A DNA stretch of 64,000 nucleotides from contig NC_079168.1 in NCBI RefSeq assembly GCF_947568905.1, positions 12,276,001 through 12,340,000 on the forward strand, in the 5' to 3' direction. This document shows, piece by piece, positions 3,001-43,591 of the stretch. The translations under genes were made by a program, and so were the position numbers. Below the pieces are notes generated by a model, which made no database searches, was not told the origin of the DNA, and saw only the letters and a program-made list of their open reading frames with translations. The DNA is from Ostrea edulis (taxonomy: Eukaryota). The stretch's first letter is position 1; each line of letters starts with the position of its first letter.

Positions 3001-4942
3001 ATTTCATGTATGTGTCAGTAGTATTTAATGATAGATCTCTTACTTAAATGATGCTGGGTATTGCTGCATTAGCCATGGAATTTCAAACATATAGTTGAAC
3101 TGCCAATACAAAAAGACAATCAAGAAAACAAGTATATAGATAAGAAGTAATATTGTACAGGTTGTAAAATAAAAGTTTTTATTTCATGAAATGAACTCCT
3201 ATCTTATAACATTGATCAAATAAGCAAGTTGTTGGGATGCAAATTAAACGTTAAATGCACTAGCACAGTCAATGTGTGATAAATAAGATTCTAGAATACA
3301 CAAATTATACTTTTTGGTAAAATACTGACCAAAATCCAACATGAGGAAAACATGATTTAAGATATTACAGATTCCTATGACATTTACTTTAGACAAGGGG
3401 TGTAACTCTCTCACCAATCCTGCTGAATTTACCTATATTTGGTTTCCTTTGAACAAAAACTGAGGACATGCAATGGAATCAATTATTTTCACAGGTACAA
3501 TGAGACATTTTCTTGATACTTAAAAGTAAGGAACTTTTTTGCACATCCTATTCAATATCTAAGCATTATTTGCAAGTAAATTTGTGCAAATGTTAGCCAT
3601 GATTGACAGAATTACTTCCCCTATCTTTACTAATTCTCACAGAAATTCATCAATTCCTATTGCAATCAAAGAGAGTCATTTTTCATGGTGATTTGTGACA
3701 TACTTTGTGAGAAAATTACACAAGAATGTTTTCTTTTGCAATTTGACTGAGGTCAGTGCTAAACCTTTGCTATTGGTAGATTGAATGGCCTATACAATAC
3801 ACAAGAATCGTTGAAATAACATTACCTGACAAGACTCTTGCAAATTGCCCATGCTTTCTGATAAAATGTCTGGAAAATAATTTTGTTTTTTAAAACGTTT
3901 TTCAATTCAGTAAAGTGGAATGTATTTGTGTATGAGGAAAATCATCAATTTAGATTTTATCACATTCAACATCAGATATATATATATACCTTTGAGACTC
4001 ATTGTAAAAGCACCATTGTATTCACTAGAGATTCCATTAACCTTTGTAAGAAAGAAGCTCATTGGTTGAGCATGATCAAAGACAGCCACTGGTTCCTTTG
4101 AGGTAAGTGCCATGGTTCCTGTCTTCTGTCTTTTCATTGGAGGAGACACTGGTCCCTGTCTGGTTTTGCTTCCACTCGCAGCACCATCATCATCAGCTGG
4201 TGCTAATAATAATTATATTAATCAGTTTACTTGCGACTCTTCTAATGAACATAAAGTAAAAATTTTTAAAGATGCTTCATGATTAACATGTACAAAATGG
4301 ATAAACTGAGGACAATTGCTATCAAATCTCTGAAAATTAATAAATGTACATGAATTTTTAGCTTTAATAATATAAAACTTTCCAAATTACAGAAAACTTA
4401 CATGGATGTGAGAATTCCTTGAAATGAGCAGGGTTTTTCCTGTAACAGTTTGAGCCATATTGACAAGGAGGTATGGACTGACAAGCACTTTGTACTAAAC
4501 CTCTGCTAGAACTGTCACTTGAAGAATGTTTTCTTTTTAAAGATGGACAATCTTTTACTCTCGTCTCTGGAACACTTTTACTTGCTCCTGATTTCCCACC
4601 CCTGGCTGAATTGTTCTGATCACTGGTTTTTTTAAATTCTGAAGAATTTTTATCCTTTTGTGAAGTTGAAATAGGTGAATATGCCATAACATGTTTGTTT
4701 ACCTTCTTAAGTAACTTTGGAGAAGTCCTTCCACTGAGAAAATCTTGTGTATTTTGTCGACGAATTGTTGCAGGCTGTTTCATCACAGACTTTGGCTCCT
4801 CGTCCTCAGAATCTGAAAGTTGGTGATTTGTAGACTGTCGTTTTGGAAATGTCGGTTTTGTAGGAGAAGGATTACAGAAAAGTGGTGAATCCCAGTCACT
4901 TGGATCTGGTTCAATGGTGGCATCCGAATCGGTGTCTGACAT
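1..4942 (-). CDS. TDP1: Tyrosyl-DNA phosphodiesterase 1, 5' part (9 coding exons in window, 3' end beyond left edge)
   Basis: Exons 4942-4402, 4202-3990, 3869-3826, 3099-3044, 2856-2760, 1115-1081, 855-763, 564-394 and 261-<1 join in phase. They read ...[10 protein letters not shown]...[25 protein letters not shown]...[48 protein letters not shown]...[11 protein letters not shown]...[14 protein letters not shown], the TDP1 pattern with the first HxK catalytic motif. ATG 4942 is preceded by an in-frame TGA. Confidence 0.95.
1580..2789 (-). repeat. ~47-50 bp minisatellite (~24 units) built from the TDP1 exon 3' end plus donor site
   Basis: Unit on - strand GAAATTTATCAACATCAAGTTCTGTCAG|GTAAGTGTTATAGGAAAACAG. 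The outermost copy is the real exon end (KFTNIKFCQ|gtaagt at 2760/2759). Confidence 0.95.
4406..4465 (-). other. PBZ (poly(ADP-ribose)-binding zinc finger) motif in TDP1 N-terminus
   Basis: [20 protein letters not shown] fits the PBZ consensus C-x-Y/F-G-x-x-C-Y-R-K-N-x-x-H-x-x-x-F-x-H. Confidence 0.85.
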
Positions 4943-7378: not shown

Positions 7379-9150
7379 TTAATGTAAGCAATTTTTAACA
7401 CGATTTTTAAAACGGGTACTGGGCATGACTCGAAAGATAATCATTGTAATTAAAACAGCACTTAGCACTATCCATAATTTGAAAAGAAAAGATCTTAAAT
7501 CTGTAATACCTAGAAGGCCTAGCAGCCGAGTAACTTTTCCAGCTAAATTGAAAATAAAACTAAAATTGGGTTTCACTATTGTCAGTAAGTAAGTCACGTA
7601 TAAGTTAGACATGATAATAATTTTAGACACATAATGAAAATAATTTTCTTTAAACTTAGATATTGTAAGACCATACAATGCATATAGAACTGATCTAAAA
7701 TGTAACATATAAAGTTACCAAATCTTCTACGTCCTAATTTAGTCTATCTTATTCTGTAATTAGTTAAACTCGCATTCAGTATTTTCGTACGAATCGTATA
7801 AATCTCATTTTACGAAATTTTCAATGAAACATTTTAATTAAAAGTTATTATTGAAATAGAGAAATACAAACAATCTACATATCTATTTTTTGATCAACCG
7901 CCTGAAAACCTCACATGAATACGAAAATACGGCGAATGGAATCCCATGTAAACATTTTTTACCAGCTCGCAGAGAAAATATGCTGAAACACTCTTCCTGA
8001 GGATTTTTATTGAGGTTTGTGTAGTGTTTCTTTTCGAAATCTATTCTTTTAAGTATAAACTTTAATCGTATACGAAGAAAGTTATTTATTTTGGAACCAA
8101 ATTATCGGATATTGCAAATTCTTTTAAGAAGATGTATTTTCAAACATGTCTGGACAGCACACAACCATTCATATTCTGTTTTGCTTAGTTGATATTTCAA
8201 ATTATATAAAACTAAAACAAAAATATCTTGGTAGTGTATGACATATTCTATTCCATGTATACTTTTCTTTTTGTGATCCATTTATATTTGACCATATCCG
8301 TATACACATGATATTGACTTAGACATAAGAGAATTTCCACTATATATTTTTTACAAAACCATATAGTTTCAAACAATTTTCCTGAAGTACTTTCTTGATC
8401 AATTTTGATGAAATAAAAAGCACTGATCTCAGAAGTATTTACAGTTCTCATCTAAAAATTTCAGAATGATTATATCTTAATCTATTGTAAAGATATATAT
8501 GACAATTCAATTTGAGAGTACTTAATCTTTATATAAGTATGTGTATTTTTGAAATAAAAAAAATCAACATTATGAATAAAATGTTATCTCTCTGCAGTAT
8601 TTCATCATAACATTTTTTCCCTTATATTACGACAGAACTTTACTTTTAATATTGCTAAACAAAATGGTGTTTATTTCATCCAAATAGAGGGAAAATTGGC
8701 TCAAAGGGAAGATTTTGAAAATATATGGTTTTATATGAAATATATAGTTTTGTATGAAATATGAAGTGGAAATTTCTTTTGGAACATTATTTCATACTTA
8801 TCATGCTTATGGCCAAGTACTGTATGATGCTGAAATTAGAATTAATAAGTTCATTATTCATCAAGGTTTGACAATTGTCTACTTTGCCCTCTTTCAATTT
8901 ACAGCGATTGTAATACATAATATTTGTTTGCTTCGTTATTTTCCTCAGCATCCATATTCTTCTCCACAGATCCGCAAATTGATTTTAGCTGTTTGAATAA
9001 AATTTAGAAAGAGATAGAAATGAATGTATTATTAAAAATAGAAAAAAATATTCAATTGTTTGTATAGTATATTCTCCCATAAAAGCTGCTTTTGAGATAC
9101 AACGCAGACTTTACACTTTCCACTTGTCATTTTCTGTTTGGATGTTGTAG

Positions 9151-10430
9151 ATGGCAGAGGTTCATATTGTTGGACAAATTGTGGGAGCCTCAGGGTTTCC
9201 TGACCACAACCTCTTCTGTAAATGGGGAGTCAACACAGGTAATACACTACACAGGTTCTATAGGTGTGTGAAAAAAAAATTCTTAAAATTAAAAAAGAAT
9301 TAACAATTTTTTCCTTTGTTGCATTTTTATGGCCCCAGAATTGAAGATTTGGGGGCATATAGTTTTTGGTCTGTCTGTCTGTGGCAAAAAACTTTAACCT
9401 TGGTAATATCTTTTATGCCATAAGAGGCAGAGCTTTCATATTTGGTATGTGTATTTCTTGTGACAAGACCTTTCTATTGACACCAAAATCTTCGACTTTG
9501 TGACCTTAACATTGACCTTTGACCTGGTTCTACTTTGTTGTAATCCAGGGACGTCAGTGTTTCACAAACACATCTTGTGTGAAATATTAGATAATACGTT
9601 AATTTTTTTCTTTTTCTTTGAACACCTACACACTTTCCCACATTTCCTCCTCAAATTAAACTACAGTAAGTTTGAAATGTTTTTTAAGAAATGTATGATT
9701 TTCATGTTCAAATTCTGTTTGTGTAGGAGGTGCTTGGAAGGCTCTAGCAGGGCTTAGAGAAGGACAGACACAGGTGGACAACCCACAGCAACATGACGCA
9801 GCCTACTGGGCCCACCCTATAGACATCCACTACGCTACCAAGGGCTTGCAAGGTCGGAAAGAAATTTTTTTGTTCTCTTGTCAGTGATATGCATTGACTT
9901 ACTTGTACAATATGTGTATTGTGTTCAATATGTTGGTGCATCATGTTCAATATGTAGAGCAAATGATGGGGAATAAATTCAGATCCCTGTGGCAATGCAT
10001 GCCTAGGATTCTTAACTTTAAGAAAAATTCAGTATTGGCAGTATTGAAGGGCATATATATGAAAATTAAGTGTTCTTGATATGTACATAAAAATTTTGGA
10101 TATTATAAACTTACAGGTTGGCCAAAGATTCATTTTCAAGTCTGGCATCAAGATTCTTTTGGAAGAAATGAACTTTATGGCTATGGCTTTTGCCATGTAC
10201 CAACTACTCCAGGCATGCACGAGATTGAGTGCCCAACTTGGAGACCCTCGGGGAGTTTCAGAGAACAAGTGTCACAGTATTTTCTGGGAGGAGGACCACA
10301 GTTGAAAAATCCAGACTTGATTTATAGTGGTGCAGATCGCTACAGACTTCATACCATTGCAATGGGAAATATACATTTAAGACTTGGAGTTATACTCAGG
10401 AACTTTGACAAATATGGAATTGAATGTTAA
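9151..10430 (+). CDS. B9D2: B9 domain-containing protein 2 (ciliary transition zone)
   Basis: Exons 9151-9238, 9727-9852 and 10117-10430 give [16 protein letters not shown]...[17 protein letters not shown]...[23 protein letters not shown]...GGGPQL...ADRYRLHT...[10 protein letters not shown], near end-to-end match to B9D2. ATG directly follows an AG acceptor, implying an upstream non-coding exon. Confidence 0.97.
9327..9560. mobile_element. Helentron-associated non-autonomous element (HINE) fragment
   Basis: TTTTATGGCCCC start, GTCTGTCTGT microsatellite and TGACCTT motifs typical of bivalve HINEs. Confidence 0.6.
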
Positions 10431-15771: not shown

Positions 15772-26191
<10,420 letters not shown>

Positions 26192-33800: not shown

Positions 33801-36800
33801 TCAATTGTACAATGTATTATATTTAGAAATTGTACCCAATACCTAATAAAACTGTTCAGATTTGAAGGCTTGAATTTAAAATCAAAATTTTGTTGTTGTT
33901 TTTTTTTTCATATTGTCATTACCTACGATATTTTTGTTTTATTATATTTTTTATCAAATATTATGTATCATTGTGTCTTTTCCTTTTATCATAATTGTAT
34001 AAATTGATATTTATGTATAATTCTATGCAATATGTAATATTTTACAATTTTGTTACACTTGATTTTGGTAGTACTCAGAGGAGGCACAGAAAGAACATAA
34101 CTGTGATCAAGAGAGAGAACTCAGTGCCTTAGATCGGACCATTAGGTGAGTATCATGTGTCACAGCTGTAGTTGTCACAATGTGGCATAGTCAGTTGTGT
34201 TGATAGTAACAAGGTGATGAGACGTACCATTAGTTATAGATGTTTTTCTATTTCAGTGCTGAGAGTTTGGAAGCCTTCAAAAATTGGACTCGCCATGACG
34301 ACAGACAAGAGACGTTCTGTGAGATAGATGGTAAAAAAAAAATTTTTTTAATATAATTTATTTATTTTTTTGGTTACATACAATACATCAGACACTTACA
34401 CAAACATACCTTTCATACATGCATACATCTCCCTGTGGTTTAGGTTACTTGCTGTACAATAGTGAAAGTAATAATAATAACAATAATACATGTACTAAAA
34501 TAATGACAAGTACATGTAGTCATAATTAATCAATTGCAAAAATATTTTCCCACTTCATCCATATTTTATCAAAGTTATGTATTTTAAATGTTTGAATTGC
34601 AGCATATTTCTCTACATGATATTTAAACTTTAAGTGACATAGTAATCCAACAAGATTTGGTTCTTTATTCTGCATTAAACAGATAAATATGTATTGTTTA
34701 ACATATAGAATTATAAAGTTTATAGCTTTATTATTTAAAGACAGTGGAATTTCACCAAATATTATATTTGACACATTAAAACCAATTCTTTCTGAAATTT
34801 TTCTATATATATGAAGACTTAACTCACTCCACAATGTTTGGGTCTTATTACAAAAAGTAAAAATATGTGTTATTGTTTCAATATTACTTGTCAAAAGATT
34901 TGACAAAATCTACAGAGATCATTTGTTTTAACACTAATGTTTAGATGGTAAAATTTTATGATTAGCTTGGAAAATTGCCTTGGAAACCTTCATTGTAGTT
35001 TAGTTCATGACAGTTATAAAAGGTTTTGATATTTCATGGTTTTTGAGTAGAAGGATTAATTTGTTCACATCATGAGTAGAAGGATTAATTTGTTCACATC
35101 ATGAGTAGAAGGATTGATTTGTTCACACTTTGAGTATAAGGAGGGATTTGTTCACATCTTGAGTAGAAGGATTGATTTGTTCACACTTTGAGTATAAGGA
35201 GGGATTTGTTGACACTTTGAGTATAAGGAGGGATTTGTTGACACTTTGAGTATAAGGATGGATTTGTTCACATATTGAGTAAAAGAATGGATTTGTTCAC
35301 ATCATGAGTAGAAGAATGGATTTGTTGACATTTTGAGTATAAGGATAGATTTGTTCACACTTTGAGTATAAGGATGGACTTTTTTTACAGATGACGATAC
35401 CCCAGACTGTCAGTATGTAGACCTGCTGTTGAATCCAGAGAGATACACTGGTTATAAGGGTGCATCTCCTCACAGGATCTGGAACAGTATTTATGAGGAA
35501 AACTGCTTCAAGTAAGTAACGTTATGTGATACAGTGTGTGTATAGATTGATCATCACACCAAGTAAAAAATCCATCTTTTGAACATTGTGTGCATGAATA
35601 TTTACATGTACATGTACTTTACTTATTGTTGTGTGTCGTTTGAATCACCTAAGTGTCCCTGGATATCCCTCAACATCTCCTTTGTCCCAGAAATACCCCT
35701 AACCTCCCATTGGTCCCAGAAATACCCTTAACCTCCCATTGGTCCCAGAAATACCCTTAACCTCCCATTGGTCCCAGAAATACCTTTAACCTCCTAATGG
35801 TTCCAGAAATACCCTTAATTTCCCATTGGTTCCAGAAATACCCTTAATTTCCCATTGGTCCCAGAAATACCCTTAACCTCCCATTGGTCCCAGAAATACC
35901 GTTAACCTCCCATTGGTCCCAGAAATACCCTTAACCTCCCATTGGTCCCAGAAATACCCATAATTTCCCATTGGTCCCAGAAATACCCCTAACCTCCCAT
36001 TGGTTCCAAAAATACCCCTCAGTCTCTCTTTGGTCCTCAAAATACCCCTTAACCTCGGTCCCGAAAATACCTCTCAACCTCTCCTTGGTCCAAGAAATAC
36101 CCCTCAGCCTCTCCTTGGTCCCAGAAATACCCTGTCCTCTCCTTGTTCCCAGAAATAAACCCCTAACTTCTCTTTTATCTCAAAAATGCCACCAATCTCT
36201 TCTTGGTCCGATGTATATCCTCTAACCTCTCATTGTTTTTGTTGCTATGTCATTCCCAGCTGTACCCCATGTTTTCCAGTGCAGCCTCCTCCTTCTCCCA
36301 AATCGTCTGACCGTGGCTTTGTGTGCAACCTTCATCTCACATTATTGGATTTTTTTGTTGAGTTCATTATCTGAAAGCCTGTTTAGGCTGCCATTGTCAA
36401 ACTTTGTTTGATGCAGAATTTCAGTTCAAGATGTCTTGCAGAAATATTAATTGATAGCTTGCATAATTCTTACAAAACTCCACTTTTAAATATATGACTC
36501 TTTTGTCTGCTTTGTTGAACAGACCTGAAGGAACTGTATATGGATCGAAGAAGACATTGGCAGGTAGGCAGATTAAAACTACACAGAAATTAGCAAAACA
36601 TCTGTACAATCAATTTCAAGATCAATGTACATTTGTCACAGTACACTGTAATTTGTAATCTTACAGCTTTTAAACAAATATTTTAAAATGATTGTTTGTT
36701 AGAACCTTGCTTTTGCTAGATGTTACCTCTTTATGTTCAAGACTGTTTCAGAGGTTTGTTTTAGCACAACTGTATATGTACTGCACAGGTTTTCTTTTCT

Positions 36801-39800
36801 TTCACAAATCTTTTTAATAATTTTAATTAGATTGGTAGCACTTAAAAATTCAAATTGAAAAACACCTTTTTTTTTAATCTAGTGTTTCCAGGATTAATAT
36901 ATGGTAATGTCACTACGAATAGGAAATTATTTTTTTCCCCACTTAAACATACGTCTCCATAACATGAAAGGAAATCCGACCCTGTCCCCATCATGCTGAA
37001 GTCCAAAGTTTGATTTGTTATGGAATTTTACTTCTTTTTTTCCTGCAGATGACTTCTTCTTATGTATTAATGGTTTGGTTTGGTTGTAGATTAACTCTTT
37101 TTGAATCAATTTTTGAAGATCACAATTGTATAGATATACCTGGCCATTGGTACAATCCCTCTAACTTCTTTATTTCATTAATTTGCATTTCATATGGTGT
37201 TTTAGTTTACATTTCATTTTTATTTTTAGATCACCTGAGCCATATACCCTAGTGAATTTTTCTGATCACAATTTGTTTGTAGTCTATTGTCTGTTTTTGT
37301 CAGTGATAACTTTTGACTACTTTCCATCAATTTTAACCAAACTTGACACAAAGAATCCATTGGTAAAGGGGATTCAGAATTGTTCAGATGAAAGTTCATC
37401 TCTCCTTAGAAGGGGGCATAATTTAGAAGTAGGTTATAGTTTTTAACAATCTTCTTAAAAAGCTAGACTTGTCGAAATGTTTCATTATATAATGAAAATT
37501 CATTGATCACAAAGTTAGTGTTTAAAGTTTTACAAAGTTTATTCATATAGGAAAATAATTTTAAAAAATCCCTCCCAGAAATACAAGGAAACAAGTTTAA
37601 TAGATTAATATGCAAACATCCTCATGTAGTGTAGGATCAATTTTGTTAATTAGAACGTGACCCTCGGGGCTGGGGTGGGGCCACAATAAGGATTAAAGTT
37701 TTACATATGAATACAAAAGATGATTTTTAAAAAAATCTTCTCAAGAACCATTGTTTGTGAGATTAATATGCAAGAATCCATATGTTGTGTAAATTCAGTT
37801 TTTGTTTGAATTAGACTATAACCCTCATGATGAGTTATCCCCAAGCATCCTCTTGTTGTGTAGATTCAATTGTGACTAGTTTCGTGAGACCAGGCCTGGA
37901 GGTTATAAAACTTTTACCATACTCATACACAAACTCAGCCATGTTTGCTTTGAGTACAACTCTGAGCAAGCTTCGAAACATAATCAAAAAATCTTCTGCA
38001 TGTACCTCATTTGAGTGTGAGAATTATTTTATAAAACTTTTGTAACCTTCACTTTTGAGTATGAGTACGATTTAGATCACAGAGGTAAGAGTTTGAGTAT
38101 GAAAACGTGCTCCAAAAAGTTTTACAACCTTCAGGGCTGGGGCACGAGAGAGGGTTAAAGTTCAATTTTGGGTTGCGTAGTTTTACAAGGGGAACTGCAA
38201 CTGCTCAGGAGAGCAATGTGACTCATGGGCTACATGTTTTATTTTGAATTAGAATTTTTTTTCATCAATTGTAATGAGCATTGTCATTAAAAATCAGTAT
38301 TTGTAAACCAGGTAATTTGTTCATTATTTGATTTTCTGCCGTATTTCATTACAGGGTCATTGGAAGGTATGCTGGCGGTAGCTTCTGTAACACTCTATAT
38401 ACTAACTCTTACCTTCTTTCTCTCTCTGCAGCTCAAAATGCATGCAGCATTAGTGTAGTGTGACATGTGATTTATTGTAATCATCATAAGGATATTATAC
38501 ATGTATATATCAAAGGAAACTGTTCAAAATTAAAGTAACGTATACATTTAAAACGTTTTAAGTAAGAAGTATTCATAACACCTGATAGGTTTTTTTTCTT
38601 GGATTTTGCTACAGTAAAAGTCATTTATATGGAGCTTGTTTATTATAAAGAAAATTTGATTATAAATTTTGTTTAATAGAAAATATGGTTATTTGAAATT
38701 TCCTATGAAGAATTCTAAGTTATAAAAAAATCATATTGAATTCTCATTTTTAAAAATGTTTAAAATTTCTTTTTATAGTGAAATGGAATTCATGTGTTCT
38801 GACCTCAGTTAAAATTCCATTTATTATAAACTTTTCAAATGTTCAATCATGATCTGAGGTGTTGCATACTACAAACAAAATAAATTTTTCTTGATTATCG
38901 AGCATTCCTTTGATTATTTTAATATGTTGAAATAACTTTAATGTTTATTTTCTTGTTGATTTTTTATTATACACTTCCTTATATATATAAAAATCTTCCC
39001 GATCAATAGATAGAATCTGGGTTATAAGGAATTAGGCATAGTGTCCGTCTCCAGGAACTCCTAATAAACAAGTTTTACTGTATACAGCTTATATCCTCTT
39101 GTAAAATTGTCCATGTTGTTTTATATTCAATTTCCATCTAGTTAATTATCTTTCTCTAATTAGATTGCTTATACTATCATTCAAATTTACTAATTATTAA
39201 ACTAAACCATCCTCTTTATTTTATGAAGCATGTGGTCTGTTTGATAGTTGTGACAAGATATGAATAACAAATACACAAAGCATAAAGTATATTAAACGCA
39301 TTGTAGTGATTTCAATGTATTACTTTCACTATTCTGGAAAGGTGGCACTGAACATTTCATGCATGTTATAAATAAGTGTACATAGTTTCACAAAGTGTTA
39401 TGGTAATCTATAACAAAGTTTGTAATTCTTTTTAATTAAACTTGCAGTCAAGAAGACAGAAACAAATCAATACTATTTTCTATGTACAGTAGTTTATTGG
39501 TCACTTTTGTGTGAGGTGATTAAACATGTGTATTTTCCTGGTAATGTAGGTCTCTGTTTGAGATGATTTAACATGTGTATTTTCCTGGTAATGTAGGTTT
39601 CTGTTTGAGATGATTTAACATGTGTATTTTCTATGTACAGTAGTTTATCAGTCACTTCTGTGTAAGATGATTAAACATGTGTATTTTCTATGTACAGTAG
39701 TTTATCGGTCACTTCTGTGTAAGATGATTAAACTTGTGTATTTTCCTGGTAATGTAGGTCTCTGTTTGGAACAGCGAGCTTTCTACAGACTCATTTCTGG

Positions 39801-42800
39801 ACTCCACACCAGCATTAATCTACATCTCTGTAACGAGTACCTTTTTCCTTGTGAGTATGAGTGTGTGATAATTTTTACTTTTTCCTTGTGAGTATGAGTG
39901 TGTGAGAATTTTTACTTTTTCCTTGTGAGTATGAGTGTGTGAGAATTTTTACTTTTTCCTTGTGAGTATGAGTGTGTGAGAATTTTTACTTTTTCCTTGT
40001 GAGTATGAGTGTGTGAGAATTTTTACTTCTGATACATGAATTTCATTGTATTAGTAGAATTCCATACAACTTCAGAGTGACTTAGAAAATGACAATGTAC
40101 ATGTGTAATTGAGTAAAACAGCATATAGAATAGAGTATGAAGTGATTGACTAAGAATCATTCAAACATGGATAAGTCAACACATTTAAAATGAGCTGATA
40201 CTTTCAGATATCAATGCATGTACTTGTTATAGTAGCAATCTGGTGAGAACAAATGAATTTGACCAGAAAATTGAAATTGTGCTGTAGTTCTCCAAATTGA
40301 TGCTCTTATGTAATACATGTACCTTGTTGGTTTTTATCATTTCTCAAATTTAGACTTATATCCAGAAGATTTCTTTTTGCATGATTTTAAGGTGGACCTG
40401 TGCTTTGCAAAATGTACACTGGTATCTAGAATACAAACAGATAAAGTGCCATAATTTTTGTTTCCTGCAATATTTTATAGCCACAACATTGCTGTCTTCA
40501 CCCGAATTTAGACCAAACACTGAAGAATTTATCATGCGATTTGATCCTAAAGCCACCAAAGGCCAGGGGCCACAACGATTAAAGAACCTTTACTTTACTT
40601 ACCTGGTAGCGTTACGGGCTCTTGCTAAGGCTGCACCTTATCTGGAGGAGGTACGTTTTAAAAAAAAGTTTTTCGAATTGTCAAAACAGTTGTTGCTTTT
40701 TACATTTAATATCACTACATTTGGATTATAGGAGATAGATTTTGGAATTCTTTTATTTTTGTACAGTATCTGAACAAATGTTATGAATTTTTATTGGATA
40801 ATAAAAAATATTTTTCTTTTTCATTTAACAAACTAGGAAGAATTTTTCACGGGGAGTCCTGAAGAGGAAAAAGATATAAAGGATGGAATCAAGGATTTAC
40901 TGAAAATCGTCAAGTGAGGATATTAGCTCATTGAATTTTACTGAATTTCACAAATGTTGTGAGGGCTCTCTATATATTAAAGAACGAGGTACAAGTGTAA
41001 CTATATTTAAATCTAGAAAGTGGGTATAATTCAGAATGAGGAAATAATACTTCCTTTTCTATAATGTGAAAGTACAATATACTCCACTTATGTTGAAGTC
41101 CCTTATATTGAACTACATGTATCTGTTATATTGAAGTAAAAATAAATCCTCAATAACTTTTATATTTATATAGTTCAACATCGGTTATATTGAATTTTGG
41201 ATATAATGAAGAATTCAGGTTGGTACCCTGAATTTCAATATATCTGGAATAAACTGTATAAGGACTGCAAAATGTATGATAAAATCAGTATCGATGGATT
41301 TGGTGTTTAATAAAAGAAGAAAAATGAATTATTTCAGAGAAGTTTTGCTAAGGAAGGTGTGAGCAACTCAGATTGATGTATATTGTATACATTTATTATG
41401 TAAGCAATGAAGTGTGATTTTGTTGTTATTATTGAGGGTATGATGAACTTCAGCAGTAAAATCAAATGATGTGTATAAGTGTTTCATGTAAATTTTCTTA
41501 CACTGCTGGTGACCATCATCTCCCCCAGTAATGACAACAAAAACACTTTTCATTGTTTACATTCACCTCAACACCAACTGCAGAAAGCGGTCATAGTAGC
41601 TCAGTGGTGTAAAGTGTTCACTTTGTAACAGGGAGGTCGTGAGTTCAAGCCCCGCTCGTGCCAAGGTCGCGTCAAACTTAAGACGTAAAAACATAGGTTG
41701 TGATTGCTCCCTCTCCAAACACTTGGCATTTACAAGTGAGAATCACAGGTCTTTCGGATATGACCTTAAAAATGAAGGTCGTGGCAGGCGTTGGCACGAT
41801 AAAGAACCCTCACTGCTACGGCTATAATCGCTTAGCATAGGTCTAAATTTGTGGTACTTCACCTACAACTTGTGACGTCTCAATGTGAGTGAAAAATTCT
41901 TGATGGGATGTAAAACAAACAACCCACTATAGAATGGTCTATGATATATGCAGTTATAACCACATTATGAAAAGTGAAAACACTAAATGGAACACTAAAC
42001 GGGTGGTCACATGGTTTTTTCAATTGACAAAAAAGTCCAAAGTTTGTTTCATTTGGGTTTGTGTGGTAAATCACTGAAAAAGATAGGAGGTTTACAGATA
42101 GGTTTTACTTTTGTTTATATTTTTTGCTTAAAACAAAAAACAAATGTTTTAAATTTTAAAGAATTGACACCTGTCGTTTTCAGTGATTTGGCAGTCAACA
42201 CGTATGGCCAACCTAGAGCATGGTTTGGCATCCCGCCAAGTACTGCCAACTGTTTTATGCATCATGGATATATGAACTTAAAAACTCTACAACAGAATTG
42301 ATAAGGAAAAAATCTTTTGAATGTAAATATTGAGATATGAACTTGATACTCCTTAGTGAAATTGATAGGAAAGAAAATCTATTGAATATAGATATGTTCA
42401 AACTATTTTTGTATCATATTGCTTGAAGCCTGCATTCTGTTTTCTGATGGAGACACTTCCATGTGAAAACAAAACGATTTATAGAATTACTGAGCAATTT
42501 CTGCTGTTGTAATGAAATAGCTAATGAGTATTTCACTGGGAAATCACTGATTTCAACTGTTTGTCTTTAACTTAAAAAAACAACATCTTTTGACATTTTT
42601 ACCATTACATTGATAGTTTTGGGCCAAAATGCAGTTGTGACTACACAAGATTTTGGGCCATATTGCTTTGACACAATCTCCGAAAGCCATATTTCTTTTA
42701 GTCACCTTCATATCCATTTCATATTAGTGATATGAAATATTGAGGTCAGCTAAGGTGATGGCCATATGGTGAAGATGAAATTTATCACCATTGTATTTTA

Positions 42801-43591
42801 GGCCTTGATATGCAATTGAGGGCATAGTGTTTCTTATCTCATTACGTTTTTTTCCAGGTCATTTCCTGACCACTTTGATGAAAGTAATCTTTTCAAAGGA
42901 GACTCCAAAGTTGCAAAGAAACTTCTGGTAACTTAAATCTATTGTCTTATTCGTACAACATGAATTTAGCCGACTACATCTAACTGAATCTTCTGTACAT
43001 ACATAGACTTGCTGTGAATATTCCTATTTATATCTGCAGACTGAATTCCGGGAGCACTTCAGAAACATTTCCCGCATCATGGATTGTGTTGGATGTGACA
43101 AGTGTAAGCTGTGGGGGAAATTACAGGTAAATGAAAATTACCTGTTCCTGGAAATGTACTTTTCTTTCTAAAAAATCCTCAGAGATTGTGAAAAAAACAA
43201 AATGTGATCACAGAAAAAGCAATTTGAAATAAATTTAGACTATTAACTGTGAATTTGTTTATTTTTTCACACCAGATACAAGGTATGGGGACTGCCCTGA
43301 AGATTCTGTTTTCTGGAGACAGTGTTGGGCTACAGTCAACTGTCAATGCCAATCACAAGCAGCGTTTCCAGCTCAGGAGAACAGAAATTGTCTCTCTCTT
43401 TAATGCGTTTGGAAGGTAGGTCATTTACAGTAAAGTGGATGTAGTTATTGAAGACAGTTTTTACTTTTCTTACATTTTAACGGAATAGTATGGATTGTGG
43501 ACAATCGTAATATTTATTGCTCTTTTCACTTTCCTTCAGGCTCTCAAGCAGTATACATACAATAGAAAAATTCAGGAAGTTGACAAGCTGA
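26564..43591 (+). CDS. ERO1: ER oxidoreductin 1 (ERO1-like), 15 core exons plus candidate microexons
   Basis: Exons 26564-26668 (signal peptide, CFCK), 30045-30164, 31263-31346 ([20 protein letters not shown]), 33716-33775, 34072-34145, 34257-34330, 35391-35511 ([19 protein letters not shown]), 36523-36563, 39758-39850 ([17 protein letters not shown]), 40481-40650, 40837-40913, 42858-42927, 43040-43126 ([18 protein letters not shown] active site), 43276-43415 and 43540-43591. Confidence 0.97.
26880..27665. mobile_element. Old TIR element (~80-bp diverged TIRs) interrupted by a SINE
   Basis: AGGTTCAGCACAACCTCT...TTTGAAATAGC is mirrored by GCTAAATC...AGAGATTGTGCTGGACCT. Confidence 0.55.
27075..27346 (-). 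mobile_element. SINE copy (same family as 54241-54499; 3' domain shared with 41587-41925)
   Basis: Shared TTTAACGTCCC...TTTCACTCATATGGAGA...CCGCCCCATTTAGTCACCTCTTACGACAAGCAAGGGGCACT, with a short simple-repeat tail. Confidence 0.75.
29160..29821. mobile_element. HINE with ~3 internal repeats
   Basis: Poly-C, CTGTCCTTCCGTCTGTCTG microsatellite, repeated ATGACCTTGACCTCAAGGTCAAAATT, terminal hairpin GTGAGCATTGCTCAC then CTCTTGTT. Confidence 0.7.
30525..31145. repeat. Compound minisatellite: ~30-bp core plus variable (GA)n, ~12 units
   Basis: AGTACTCAGGACATAGTACATAACAG(AG)CTG(AG)n repeated, in ERO1 intron 2. Confidence 0.95.
34500..35000 (-). mobile_element. 5'-truncated L1/Tx1-clade non-LTR retrotransposon, ORF2 C-terminus
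   Basis: ORF 34906-34526 reads [10 protein letters not shown]...LW...IIFG...[13 protein letters not shown]...KW, and the frameshifted upstream part reads NDLCRFC, giving the C-x2-C...H-x4-C zinc knuckle. (TAT)n-like tail; antisense in ERO1 intron 6. Confidence 0.8.
35040..35380. repeat. 29-bp minisatellite (~11 units) abutting the ERO1 exon 7 acceptor
   Basis: TGAGTA(G/T)AAGGA(TT/GG)(A/G)ATTTGTT(C/G)ACA(C/T); the last unit runs into the TTTTTTACAG acceptor at 35390. Confidence 0.9.
35685..36200. repeat. 29-bp minisatellite, degenerating rightwards
   Basis: GGTCCCAGAAATACCCTTAACCTCCCATT repeated. Confidence 0.9.
36892..36903 (+). CDS. ERO1: Candidate ERO1 microexon A (12 nt; G-L-I-Y)
   Basis: Poly-T tract...GTTTCCAG|GATTAATATATG|GTAATG; phase 1-1, frame-preserving. 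Confidence 0.55.
37049..37072 (+). CDS. ERO1: Candidate ERO1 microexon B (24 nt; D-D-F-F-L-C-I-N)
   Basis: CTTCTTTTTTTCCTGCAG|ATGACTTCTTCTTATGTATTAATG|GTTTGG; phase 1-1. [11 protein letters not shown] aligns ungapped to vertebrate SFYTWLEG-LC. Confidence 0.55.
37213..38208. mobile_element. HINE (opposite orientation to 56612 element) with a nested MITE at 37890-38140
   Basis: Starts TTTTTAGATCACCTGAG and ends GCTCAGGAGAGCAATGTGACTCATGGGC...TGTT. Nested element has TIRs CCAGGCCTGGAGGTTATAAAACTTTT / AAAAGTTTTACAACCTTCAGGGCTGG. Confidence 0.7.
38355..38366 (+). CDS. ERO1: Candidate ERO1 microexon C (12 nt; G-S-L-E)
   Basis: TTTTCTGCCGTATTTCATTACAG|GGTCATTGGAAG|GTATGC; restores LEG-LC as in vertebrate WLEGLC. 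Confidence 0.6.
39473..39768 (+). repeat. Mixed 47/56-bp array containing copies of an ERO1 acceptor plus exon start
   Basis: TTTTCCTGGTAATGTAG|GT(C/T)TCTGTTTG at 39549/39550, 39596/39597 and the real site 39757/39758. Confidence 0.9.
39838..40030 (+). repeat. 37-bp array containing copies of an ERO1 exon end plus donor
   Basis: TTTTTCCTT|GTGAGTATGAGTGTGTGA; GT at 39851 (real), 39888, 39925, 39962 and 39999. Confidence 0.95.
41587..41925 (+). mobile_element. tRNA-derived SINE, apparently full length
   Basis: A box TAGCTCAGTGG 41597-41607, B box GAGTTCAAGCCC 41641-41652; 3' part CGATAAAGAACCCTC...TGAGTGAAAAATTC...TAAAACAAAC is shared with the other two SINE copies. Confidence 0.75.

What the first reader, a model, noticed from the sequence alone, without database searches (positions are those of the whole stretch)
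36564..39757. Cluster of frame-preserving microexons in the ERO1 Cys208-Cys241 regulatory loop
Seen: three candidate cassette exons with good acceptors lie between exon 8 (...KKTLA-G) and the GLCLEQR exon: A 36892-36903 (12 nt, GLIY), B 37049-37072 (24 nt, DDFFLCIN) and C 38355-38366 (12 nt, GSLE). All are phase 1-1, multiples of 3 and end in G. A+C gives LIYGSLEGLC and B gives [11 protein letters not shown], and both align ungapped to vertebrate (T/S)FY(S/T)WLEGLC, which is otherwise missing from the model. B adds a new cysteine. Established: in human Ero1-alpha the Cys208-Cys241 disulfide clamps this loop and is reported to gate O2/H2O2 access to FAD. Inference: combinatorial or mutually exclusive microexon splicing could tune ERO1 oxygen gating in a hypoxia-tolerant animal.
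Basis: partly seen in the sequence, partly recalled or inferred. Interest (0 to 1): 0.8.

Follow-up and report, generated by a model that had tools for sequence, protein, structure and literature searches.

The report
Oyster ERO1 loop microexons: one confirmed
In the flat-oyster ERO1 gene, one of the three proposed 12-24 base mini-exons (C) is used in the main mRNA and is already annotated; a second (A) is conserved among oysters but not yet seen in oyster RNA; the third (B) looks like chance.

Summary
The window carries the 16-exon ERO1 gene of Ostrea edulis. RefSeq isoform X1 (459 aa) maps onto it at 100% identity.

- **C (38355-38366, GSLE): real.** Spliced transcript contigs from two runs, in two studies, join exon 8 to C to the GLCLEQR exon. 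RefSeq X1 and X2 differ only by GSLE, so C is an already annotated cassette microexon. Its sequence, splice sites and a downstream TGCATG are conserved in four oyster genera.
- **A: conserved, but no oyster RNA evidence.** AG, GT, length and open frame hold in Saccostrea and Crassostrea virginica. Its 21-nt form (36883-36903, VFPGLIY) is the single best match in all three oyster introns to an annotated Mytilus microexon (VFRGLGV).
- **B: probably chance.** It is not conserved and has no RNA support. The intron holds 74 mechanical candidates of this kind.

Arrays of phase 1-1 microexons at this exact site are annotated in mussels (three) and a scallop (two). I mapped two in gar ERO1B, and amphioxus isoforms differ by GSPLE. 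A 2018 Conus paper already reported mollusc Ero1 isoforms with indels in this loop.

Combinatorial use in the oyster and any effect on oxygen gating remain untested.

The parts
35391..35511 (+). ERO1 coding exon 7 (...[10 protein letters not shown]...EENCF-K). It holds the Cys208 equivalent (Cys211 of the oyster protein).
   Evidence: Transcript contigs join 35511>36523 with GT..AG. Exact match to O. edulis X1 residues 173-213. Pfam ERO1 hit.
36523..36563 (+). ERO1 coding exon 8 ([14 protein letters not shown]). It ends in phase 1 with G.
36742..36753 (+). It lies in a conserved intronic island at 36691-36777.
   Evidence: AG, GT, the 12-nt length and the open frame are kept in Saccostrea (DFFR) and C. 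virginica (DIFQ). It loosely resembles the scallop AYFK microexon. No RNA evidence.
36883..36903 (+). Candidate microexon A. The 21-nt form is VFPGLIY (acceptor ctag|). The donor is ATG|GTAATGT.
   Evidence: Conserved island at 36868-36915. Both forms keep AG, GT, length and frame in Saccostrea (VFQGLYN) and C. virginica (VFQGYIH). This site is the best match in all three oyster introns to the annotated Mytilus californianus microexon VFRGLGV: 20/28, 22/28 and 19/28 identical, with the next best at 16-17. No joint and no depth here in the RNA contigs.
37049..37072 (+). Candidate B (24 nt, DDFFLCIN): most likely a chance AG..GT segment.
   Evidence: Three-way identity is 0.20-0.26, which is background. 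It fails the conservation screen. It is single-copy in the genome. No joint or depth in the RNA contigs, and it is absent from the two RefSeq isoforms.
38355..38366 (+). Microexon C, coding exon 9 of 16: 12 nt, GGTCATTGGAAG, (G)SLE, phase 1-1. It is a cassette exon.
   Evidence: It is included in the spliced contigs of X7 (1379 nt, depth 53) and X1 (3199 nt, depth 70). RefSeq X1 and X2 differ only by GSLE. It is conserved with synonymous changes in Saccostrea, C. virginica and a Magallana/Crassostrea-type oyster.
38400..38445 (+). Conserved intronic element 34-79 nt downstream of C: TACTAAC (38400-38406), a pyrimidine tract, CAG (to 38431), then TCAAAATGCATG with TGCATG at 38439-38444.
   Evidence: TACTAAC, the CAG and TGCATG are invariant in four oyster genera. 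This is the only conserved island between C and exon 10. GCATG occurs about 0.9 times per kb in the window. Its function is inferred, not shown.
39758..39850 (+). It holds the Cys241 equivalent (Cys233) and the start of the FAD-domain helix.
40481..40651 (+). ERO1 coding exon 11.
   Evidence: Joint 39850>40481 with GT..AG in X7. Exact match to X1.

Best explanation
The region is the intron-rich part of the Ostrea edulis ERO1 gene that encodes the loop between the equivalents of human Ero1-alpha Cys208 and Cys241.

The loop is built from exon 8 plus a 12-nt cassette microexon, C (GSLE). C is included in the predominant mRNA and skipped in a minor annotated isoform. Including it adds four residues directly before the Gly-Leu-Cys of the second regulatory cysteine. 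It restores the conserved (S/W)LE-GLC motif and lengthens the Cys-Cys loop by four residues.

C belongs to an old gene architecture. The upstream exon ends in phase 1 with G, the next exon starts with the rest of a Gly codon, and one to three phase 1-1 microexons lie between them, almost all of which also end in G. Any subset of them therefore keeps the frame.

Two more conserved, exon-like islands in the oyster intron (A in its 21-nt form, and A0) are probably rarely used members of this array. B is a chance match.

The conserved UGCAUG about 74 nt downstream of C is the kind of site through which an Rbfox-type factor would promote inclusion. That step, and any change in oxidase regulation, are inferred rather than shown.
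For: - RNA: contigs of two runs from two studies contain exon 8, then C, then the next exon. They show canonical joints and no other insert.
- Species and gene: O. edulis X1 (XP_048734875.1) maps at 100% identity to 16 exons of the window.
- Cassette status: X1 and X2 differ only by GSLE. C. gigas (457/453 aa) and C. virginica (455/451 aa) show the same 4-aa difference.
- Conservation of C: it is coding-conserved, with synonymous changes, in four oyster genera.
- Motif: exon 8 plus C aligns ungapped to human ...TFYSWLEGLC.
- Array in other bivalves: microexons with AG/GT, phase 1-1 and a final G were located in genomic DNA of Mytilus californianus (15, 27 and 21 nt) and Mizuhopecten (12 and 15 nt). 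RefSeq isoforms use them in different combinations.
- Array in chordates: gar ERO1B has 12-nt and 27-nt microexons at the same intron position and phase. Amphioxus isoforms differ by GSPLE, and several vertebrate ERO1B isoforms skip the segment.
- A and A0: of 73 candidates screened, only these keep AG, GT, length and frame in two other oyster genera. A is the top match to the Mytilus VFRGLGV exon in all three oyster introns.
- Prior literature: mollusc Ero1 isoforms with indels in this loop are reported in PMC6275033.
Against: - All RNA evidence comes from assembled contigs. These show the major form only and cannot give inclusion levels or exclude rare isoforms.
- The skip isoform X2 rests on RefSeq models. 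I did not see it in reads.
- A and A0 have no transcript support in any oyster: not in RefSeq, not in the contigs, and not in the listed members of the Crassostrea protein cluster.
- The order of exons differs between oysters (A before C) and mussels (VFRGLGV last), so one-to-one orthology is not settled.
- Scoring the splice variants against the Pfam ERO1 profile does not discriminate between them: 47.8 bits for skip, 47.6 for +C.
- The structure model is unreliable in the loop.
Confidence: 0.8

Rival explanations
1. One reading: A, B and C are all functional cassette exons of O. edulis ERO1, used combinatorially or mutually exclusively (A+C versus B) to tune oxygen gating.
For: All three have the right phase, length and splice dinucleotides. 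B has the best pyrimidine tract of the candidates (14 of 15). Other molluscs do produce several loop isoforms.
Against: B is not conserved in Saccostrea or C. virginica. No contig joint or depth is seen at A or B. Only +C and skip isoforms are annotated in four oyster species. There are 74 chance candidates in the intron. The motif is complete with C alone.
Confidence: 0.07
2. The conserved islands at A0 and A are not exons. They are intronic splicing-regulatory elements or pseudo-exons that help define exon 8 and microexon C, and they never enter mature mRNA.
For: No transcript or annotated isoform in any oyster contains them. The whole 370 nt after exon 8 is weakly conserved, at 62-66%. The encoded peptides vary (GLIY/GLYN/GYIH and DCFR/DFFR/DIFQ). 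A0 has a weak donor, GTTTGT.
Against: The conservation peaks exactly on AG and GT at fixed 12-nt and 21-nt spacing, with an open frame in three genera. Only these candidates out of 73 behave so. A is the single best match to an annotated mussel microexon in all three oyster introns.
Confidence: 0.35
3. C is constitutive in O. edulis, and the skip isoform X2 is an annotation artefact caused by aligners that miss a 12-nt exon.
For: Both RNA contigs contain C and no skip contig was seen. Short-read aligners often drop 12-nt exons (own knowledge).
Against: The same +/- pair is annotated independently in C. gigas and C. virginica. Equivalent cassettes are annotated in Mercenaria (DYSLE), Dreissena (EKSLE) and amphioxus (GSPLE). 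A Logan transcript-derived protein from another bivalve also lacks the cassette (P0190).
Confidence: 0.15

Closest known systems
RefSeq models of Ostrea edulis 'ERO1-like protein beta': isoform X1 (XP_048734875.1, 459 aa) and X2 (XP_048734876.1, 455 aa)
   Same: X1 maps at 100% identity to the window. X1 and X2 differ only by GSLE, which is microexon C.
   Different: Neither model contains A, A0 or B. The annotation says nothing about conservation of the intronic islands.
Conus geographus Ero1 X1/X2 and the mollusc Ero1 loop-indel isoforms described in PMC6275033 (Int J Mol Sci 2018)
   Same: The isoforms differ only by short indels (7 aa in Conus) in the flexible loop between Cys208 and Cys241. 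The authors note four such isoforms in Aplysia and seven in Biomphalaria, and suggest regulatory differences.
   Different: That paper works at cDNA and protein level in gastropods and, in the passages I read, does not describe the inserts as separate exons. Here the exons are located in bivalve and gar genomes, and their shared phase and position are shown.
Mytilus and Mizuhopecten ERO1 microexon arrays, as annotated in RefSeq
   Same: Same intron and same phase 1-1, and every microexon ends in G. Mytilus has 15-, 27- and 21-nt exons giving five isoforms. Mizuhopecten has 12- and 15-nt exons giving three isoforms. The Mytilus VFRGLGV exon matches oyster A.
   Different: In oysters only one microexon is known to be expressed. 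The order of the look-alike exons differs between mussel and oyster.
Human Ero1-alpha regulatory Cys208-Cys241 pair (PMC4683387; structures 3AHQ and 3AHR)
   Same: The oyster protein keeps both cysteines and the (S/W)LEGLC...[11 protein letters not shown] segment. In human the pair is regulatory and is needed for maximal turnover.
   Different: The oyster loop is shorter: 21 residues lie between the two cysteines with C and 17 without it, against 32 in human. No biochemical data exist for any bivalve isoform.
Rbfox- or SRRM4-type regulated microexons of animals (own knowledge)
   Same: A very short cassette exon with conserved flanking intron and a conserved UGCAUG downstream.
   Different: No evidence here for tissue specificity or for dependence on any factor. 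ERO1 is a housekeeping ER oxidase, not a typical neuronal microexon host.

Membership tests
ERO1 (Pfam PF04137), ER oxidoreductin | Match to the family profile above the curated cut-off | tested here: met
   Five exon-wise hits of up to 65 bits against a cut-off of 27. The loop peptide scores 46-48 bits.
ERO1 (Pfam PF04137), ER oxidoreductin | Inner active-site CxxC motif and the regulatory Cys208/Cys241 equivalents | tested here: met
   CVGCDKC is encoded at 43040-43126. NCF (Cys211) lies in exon 7 and GLC (Cys233) in the exon starting at 39758. The segment aligns to human 227-265.
Cassette microexon (30 nt or shorter): candidate C | Canonical splice sites, inclusion in mature mRNA, and an isoform without it | tested here: met
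   The exon is 12 nt with cag| and |gtatgc. It is included in two transcript contigs. The skip isoform is RefSeq X2; I did not see the skip in reads.
Cassette microexon: candidate A (36883/36892-36903) | Splice sites, length and frame conserved in related species | tested here: met
Cassette microexon: candidate A (36883/36892-36903) | Inclusion in mature mRNA | tested here: not met
   No joint or depth in X7 or X1, and no oyster isoform carries it. Contigs cannot exclude rare forms, so this lowers the claim but does not exclude it.
Cassette microexon: candidate A0 (36742-36753) | Conservation of splice sites, length and frame; inclusion in mRNA | tested here: inconclusive
   Conservation is met. 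Inclusion was not seen. The donor GTTTGT is weak.
Cassette microexon: candidate B (37049-37072) | Conservation of splice sites and frame, or inclusion in mRNA | tested here: not met
   Background identity. It fails the screen and has no RNA support.
Rbfox-dependent exon | Conserved (U)GCAUG in the downstream intron | tested here: met
   TGCATG at +74 is invariant in four oyster genera.
Rbfox-dependent exon | Inclusion depends on Rbfox | not testable with these tools
   This needs knock-down or CLIP experiments, or tissue-resolved RNA-seq.

The most novel reading that the evidence does not exclude
Oyster ERO1 holds three conserved microexons (A0, A, C), not one. Two of them would be unannotated and included only in particular tissues, stages or stresses, giving up to eight loop variants beside the regulatory Cys208-Cys241 pair. 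This phase-1, G-ending microexon array would be an ancestral bilaterian device, since it is also seen in mussels, a scallop, gar ERO1B and amphioxus. Its role would be to retune ERO1 regulation by splicing.
Probability: 0.3. Interest if true: 0.6.

Novelty: new member of a known kind. Interest (0 to 1): 0.4.

Why it matters
ERO1 is the main source of disulfides and of H2O2 in the ER, and the Cys208-Cys241 pair is one of its regulatory switches. The residues next to that switch are supplied by an old, alternatively spliced set of microexons in bivalves, a fish and amphioxus. This gives ERO1 researchers natural loop variants to compare. It explains the unexplained 'indel isoforms' seen in cone snails. 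It also flags two conserved oyster exon candidates that annotation pipelines would miss.

For this window itself the result is sobering. The one exon that is certainly real is already in RefSeq, and the hypoxia and oxygen-gating story has no evidence.

Tried and rejected
- **Pfam scoring of five splice variants.** Scores were 45.3-47.8 bits, so it does not discriminate.
- **AlphaFold2 model of X1 with 44 homologues.** Mean pLDDT was 64.8 and the loop 193-233 is below 50. I drew no inference and did not run a fold search.
- **Sequencing runs X8 and X9.** I expected RNA, but they hold only low-depth intron pieces and no exons, so they are uninformative.
- **Representative search with exon 11.** It returned mostly genomic ORF fragments. 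No full-length mollusc appeared, because those sit in a cluster represented by a vertebrate protein.
- **P0002.** It is not on record.
- **P0003 contigs L005-L007.** They stop about 350 nt upstream of C, so A and B could not be checked in that oyster.
- **L009.** This is an unknown animal in a 1.39-Mb ENA contig and is too diverged for intron comparison.
- **MAFFT alignment of exon fragments to a full-length protein.** It scattered several rows. Only well-placed rows were kept for the query alignment A5.
- **Orthology of Mytilus ASYLK and AVYIRSEMT, scallop AYFK and DNTFE, and the gar exons to A0 or C.** Sliding matches gave no unique top hits. Only VFRGLGV to A is clear.
- **The segment after the conserved CAG at 38431 as a further exon (AQNACSI).** Rejected. 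It has an in-frame TGA in the Magallana-type oyster, no GT donor nearby in Saccostrea, and an indel in C. virginica.
- **Paper searches.** ERO1 plus microexon, ERO1B plus microexons, and Ero1 plus oyster plus alternative splicing found nothing relevant.
- **Exact look-up of hypothetical A- or A0-containing full-length isoforms.** Not done, because they have no reference and would have had to be typed.
Full report
**What is in the sequence.**

Exon 8 (36523-36563) ends ...TTGGCAG|gtaggc in phase 1. The GLCLEQR exon starts at 39758 after aatgtag|.
- A is tttccag|GATTAATATATG|gtaatg.
- B is cctgcag|ATGACTTCTTCTTATGTATTAATG|gtttgg.
- C is ttacag|GGTCATTGGAAG|gtatgc.

These mechanical properties are common. 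The 3.2-kb intron contains 74 stop-free AG|3n|GT segments of 6-30 nt in the required phase, and several of them also end in G. The bare observation is therefore not above chance, and each candidate needs its own evidence.

**The gene.**

Pfam ERO1 matches lie exon by exon on the + strand. RefSeq 'ERO1-like protein beta isoform X1' of Ostrea edulis (XP_048734875.1, 459 aa) maps to the window at 100% identity in 16 coding exons, from 26564 to the stop near 43590. The window is therefore the O. edulis ERO1 locus.

**RNA evidence.**

Two searches for runs gave no run on record as RNA, so I laid four candidate runs on 35300-40750. Two of them contain one high-depth spliced contig each: X7, which has the same organism label as the DNA runs that hold the window, and X1, which has a different organism label and study.

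The contig pieces are 35390-35511, 36523-36564, nine letters GTCATTGGA, 39756-39850, and then 40481-40651. In X1 the last piece starts at 40490, after nine unlike letters. The aligner absorbed one G on the left and AG on the right. Those plus the nine letters give exactly GGTCATTGGAAG, which is candidate C.

No joint touches A or B, and the depth over them is zero in both runs. The other two runs, X8 and X9, hold only low-depth intron pieces. Contigs show the major form and cannot exclude rare isoforms.

**Is C needed for the conserved motif?**

Exon 8 plus C plus the next exon ([26 protein letters not shown]...) aligns without gaps to human Ero1-alpha 227-265 ([26 protein letters not shown]...).

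**Annotated isoforms.**

I queried with a profile built from a full-length invertebrate ERO1 plus exon translations of the window and of a related oyster. This retrieved many mollusc ERO1 proteins, and cluster look-ups gave their isoforms.
- O. edulis X1 and X2 differ only by GSLE.
- C. gigas X1 and X2 (457/453 aa) differ by GSME.
- The C. virginica 455/451-aa pair differs by GSLE.
- Mercenaria has ±DYSLE and Dreissena has ±EKSLE.
- Mizuhopecten has skip, +AYFK and +DNTFE.
- Mytilus species have skip, +ASYLK, +AVYIRSEMT, both together, and +VFRGLGV.

C is therefore an already annotated cassette microexon. Multi-microexon combinations at this exact site exist in other bivalves.

[quoted passage not shown] It gives 7 aa in Conus, four isoforms in Aplysia and seven in Biomphalaria, and it suggested regulatory differences (PMC6275033).

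**Genomic proof of arrays elsewhere.**

I fetched the loci and located each insert as a separate exon with AG/GT, phase 1-1 and a final G.
- Mizuhopecten: 12 nt (AYFK) and 15 nt (DNTFE).
- Mytilus californianus: 15 nt (ASYLK), 27 nt (AVYIRSEMT) and 21 nt (VFRGLGV).

In gar ERO1B the exon-8 equivalent ends AAAG|gtaaga and the next exon starts GA-CTG-TGT. This is the same position and phase as in the oyster. Two microexons lie between them: 12 nt (GDDD) and 27 nt (GEGFYNWLE).

Amphioxus isoforms differ by GSPLE, and several vertebrate ERO1B isoforms lack the whole segment. The architecture is therefore old: a G-ending phase-1 exon, then one to three G-ending phase 1-1 microexons, then the rest of a Gly codon. 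It lets any subset be spliced in frame.

**Conservation test of A, B and C.**

I compared the window with the ERO1 loci of Crassostrea virginica (L011) and Saccostrea echinata (L012), and with short contigs of a Magallana/Crassostrea-type oyster (L005-L007).

Between exon 8 and the GLCLEQR exon there are only three conserved islands:
- 36691-36777.
- 36868-36915.
- 38330-38445.

The third island holds C. Its sequence reads GSLE, GSLE, GSLE and GSME in the four oysters, with synonymous differences. The donor context GTATGCTG is identical in all four.

The second island holds A: CTAGT.TTTC.AG|GAT......ATG|GTAATGT.

It reads DCFR in Ostrea, DFFR in Saccostrea and DIFQ in C. virginica.

In an objective screen of 73 mechanical candidates, only two sites keep AG, GT, length and open frame in both other genera:
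- A0.
- A, in both its 12-nt form and a 21-nt form (36883-36903). The 21-nt form reads VFPGLIY, VFQGLYN and VFQGYIH.

B sits in sequence at background identity (0.20-0.26 three-way). It fails the screen and is single-copy.

**Link of A to an expressed exon.**

I slid the Mytilus VFRGLGV microexon, with 3 and 4 flanking bases, along each oyster intron. Its single best ungapped match falls exactly at the 21-nt form of A in all three oysters: 20/28, 22/28 and 19/28 identical, with the next best at 16-17.

This makes A the probable counterpart of a microexon that RefSeq annotates as expressed in a mussel. The order of look-alike exons differs between mussel and oyster, so strict orthology is not settled. 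The other cross-species matches were not unique.

**How it most likely works.**

*Shown:* the main oyster mRNA includes C. Including C puts S-L-E directly before the Gly-Leu-Cys of the second regulatory cysteine and lengthens the Cys-Cys loop by four residues.

*Inferred:* inclusion or skipping of C, and perhaps of A and A0, changes the geometry or stability of that disulfide or its access by PDI.

*Inferred:* the invariant TGCATG 74 nt downstream of C is the type of site through which Rbfox proteins enhance inclusion of an upstream exon. This rests on my own knowledge and was not tested.

*Unexplained:* the conserved TACTAAC, pyrimidine tract and CAG just before the TGCATG look like a 3' splice site. 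What follows is not a conserved open exon.

*No structural argument:* the AlphaFold model has pLDDT below 50 through residues 193-233. This agrees with a flexible loop but allows no structural claim.

*No evidence:* nothing bears on hypoxia or O2/H2O2 gating.

**Verdict.**

C is real but already annotated. A is a credible conserved candidate, probably 21 nt long, and is unseen in oyster RNA. B is most likely chance.

Alternative microexon splicing of this loop is genuine and widespread. The specific combinations and their physiological meaning are not supported.

What is new here is modest: two conserved, unannotated candidate microexons in oysters, and the recognition that the mollusc 'loop indel isoforms' come from an ancient phase-1 microexon array shared with chordates. 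I found no paper that says this. The oyster isoforms and the mollusc phenomenon themselves are already public.

- Only short peptides (44-52 aa) were typed.
- No N stretches were met in the region.

Noticed in passing
window 39473-39950: Tandem repeats of 47/57 nt and 37 nt duplicate the acceptor plus the first ~11 nt of the GLCLEQR exon (copies ending near 39549 and 39596). They also duplicate its last ~10 nt plus the donor GTGAGT (three copies, 39841-39950). The transcript contigs use only 39758 and 39850. One low-depth X7 contig 'goes back 104', which suggests copy-number variation of the repeat.
   Followed up: partly
window 38400-38445: An element conserved in four oyster genera lies just downstream of microexon C: the branch-point consensus TACTAAC, a pyrimidine tract, CAG, then TCAAAATGCATG. 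It looks like a 3' splice site followed by an Rbfox-type UGCAUG, but no conserved open exon follows it.
   Followed up: partly
window ~37600-38200: An interspersed repeat lies inside the intron. Summed contig word-depth reaches hundreds to thousands in all four runs, with many loose ends and strand-switch joints. It probably explains why related-oyster contigs break about 350 nt upstream of C.
   Followed up: no
window 18389-22612 (- strand): A Methyltransf_28 (PF02636, NDUFAF7-like) gene lies upstream of ERO1 on the opposite strand. The same neighbour on the opposite strand is present at the ERO1 loci of C. virginica, Saccostrea echinata, Mizuhopecten and Mytilus californianus, so the synteny is conserved.
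   Followed up: partly
L015:15506-15517 and L015:16617-16643 (gar ERO1B): Vertebrate ERO1B also encodes this loop with two microexons, of 12 nt (GDDD) and 27 nt (GEGFYNWLE). Annotated isoforms in a seahorse, coelacanth, a lizard, a bat and others lack one or both.
   Followed up: partly
window 40481-40489: Run X1 (organism label A) carries CCACAGCCC in place of the first nine bases of exon 11, plus a few single-base differences in the exons. Its microexon letters are identical. It is probably a sister Ostrea species or a divergent haplotype.
   Followed up: no
L009 (ENA ERZ25072999, 1.39-Mb contig): A metagenome assembly holds a long animal contig with an ERO1 gene: exon 7 at 3638-3757, the MCLEKR exon near 7560, and the next exon near 10030. 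The intron before the Cys241-equivalent exon is again in phase 1 but lies one codon further upstream. The organism was not identified.
   Followed up: no
P0309 (Mercenaria mercenaria isoform X2) and P0327 (Tegillarca granosa): Mercenaria X2 carries a roughly 48-aa lysine-rich insert before DYSLE. This may be a retained or extended exon. The ark-clam model reads SIS-ALNGFRK-GTFE-DSTSTCT-GMC, which would mean several microexons included together.
   Followed up: no
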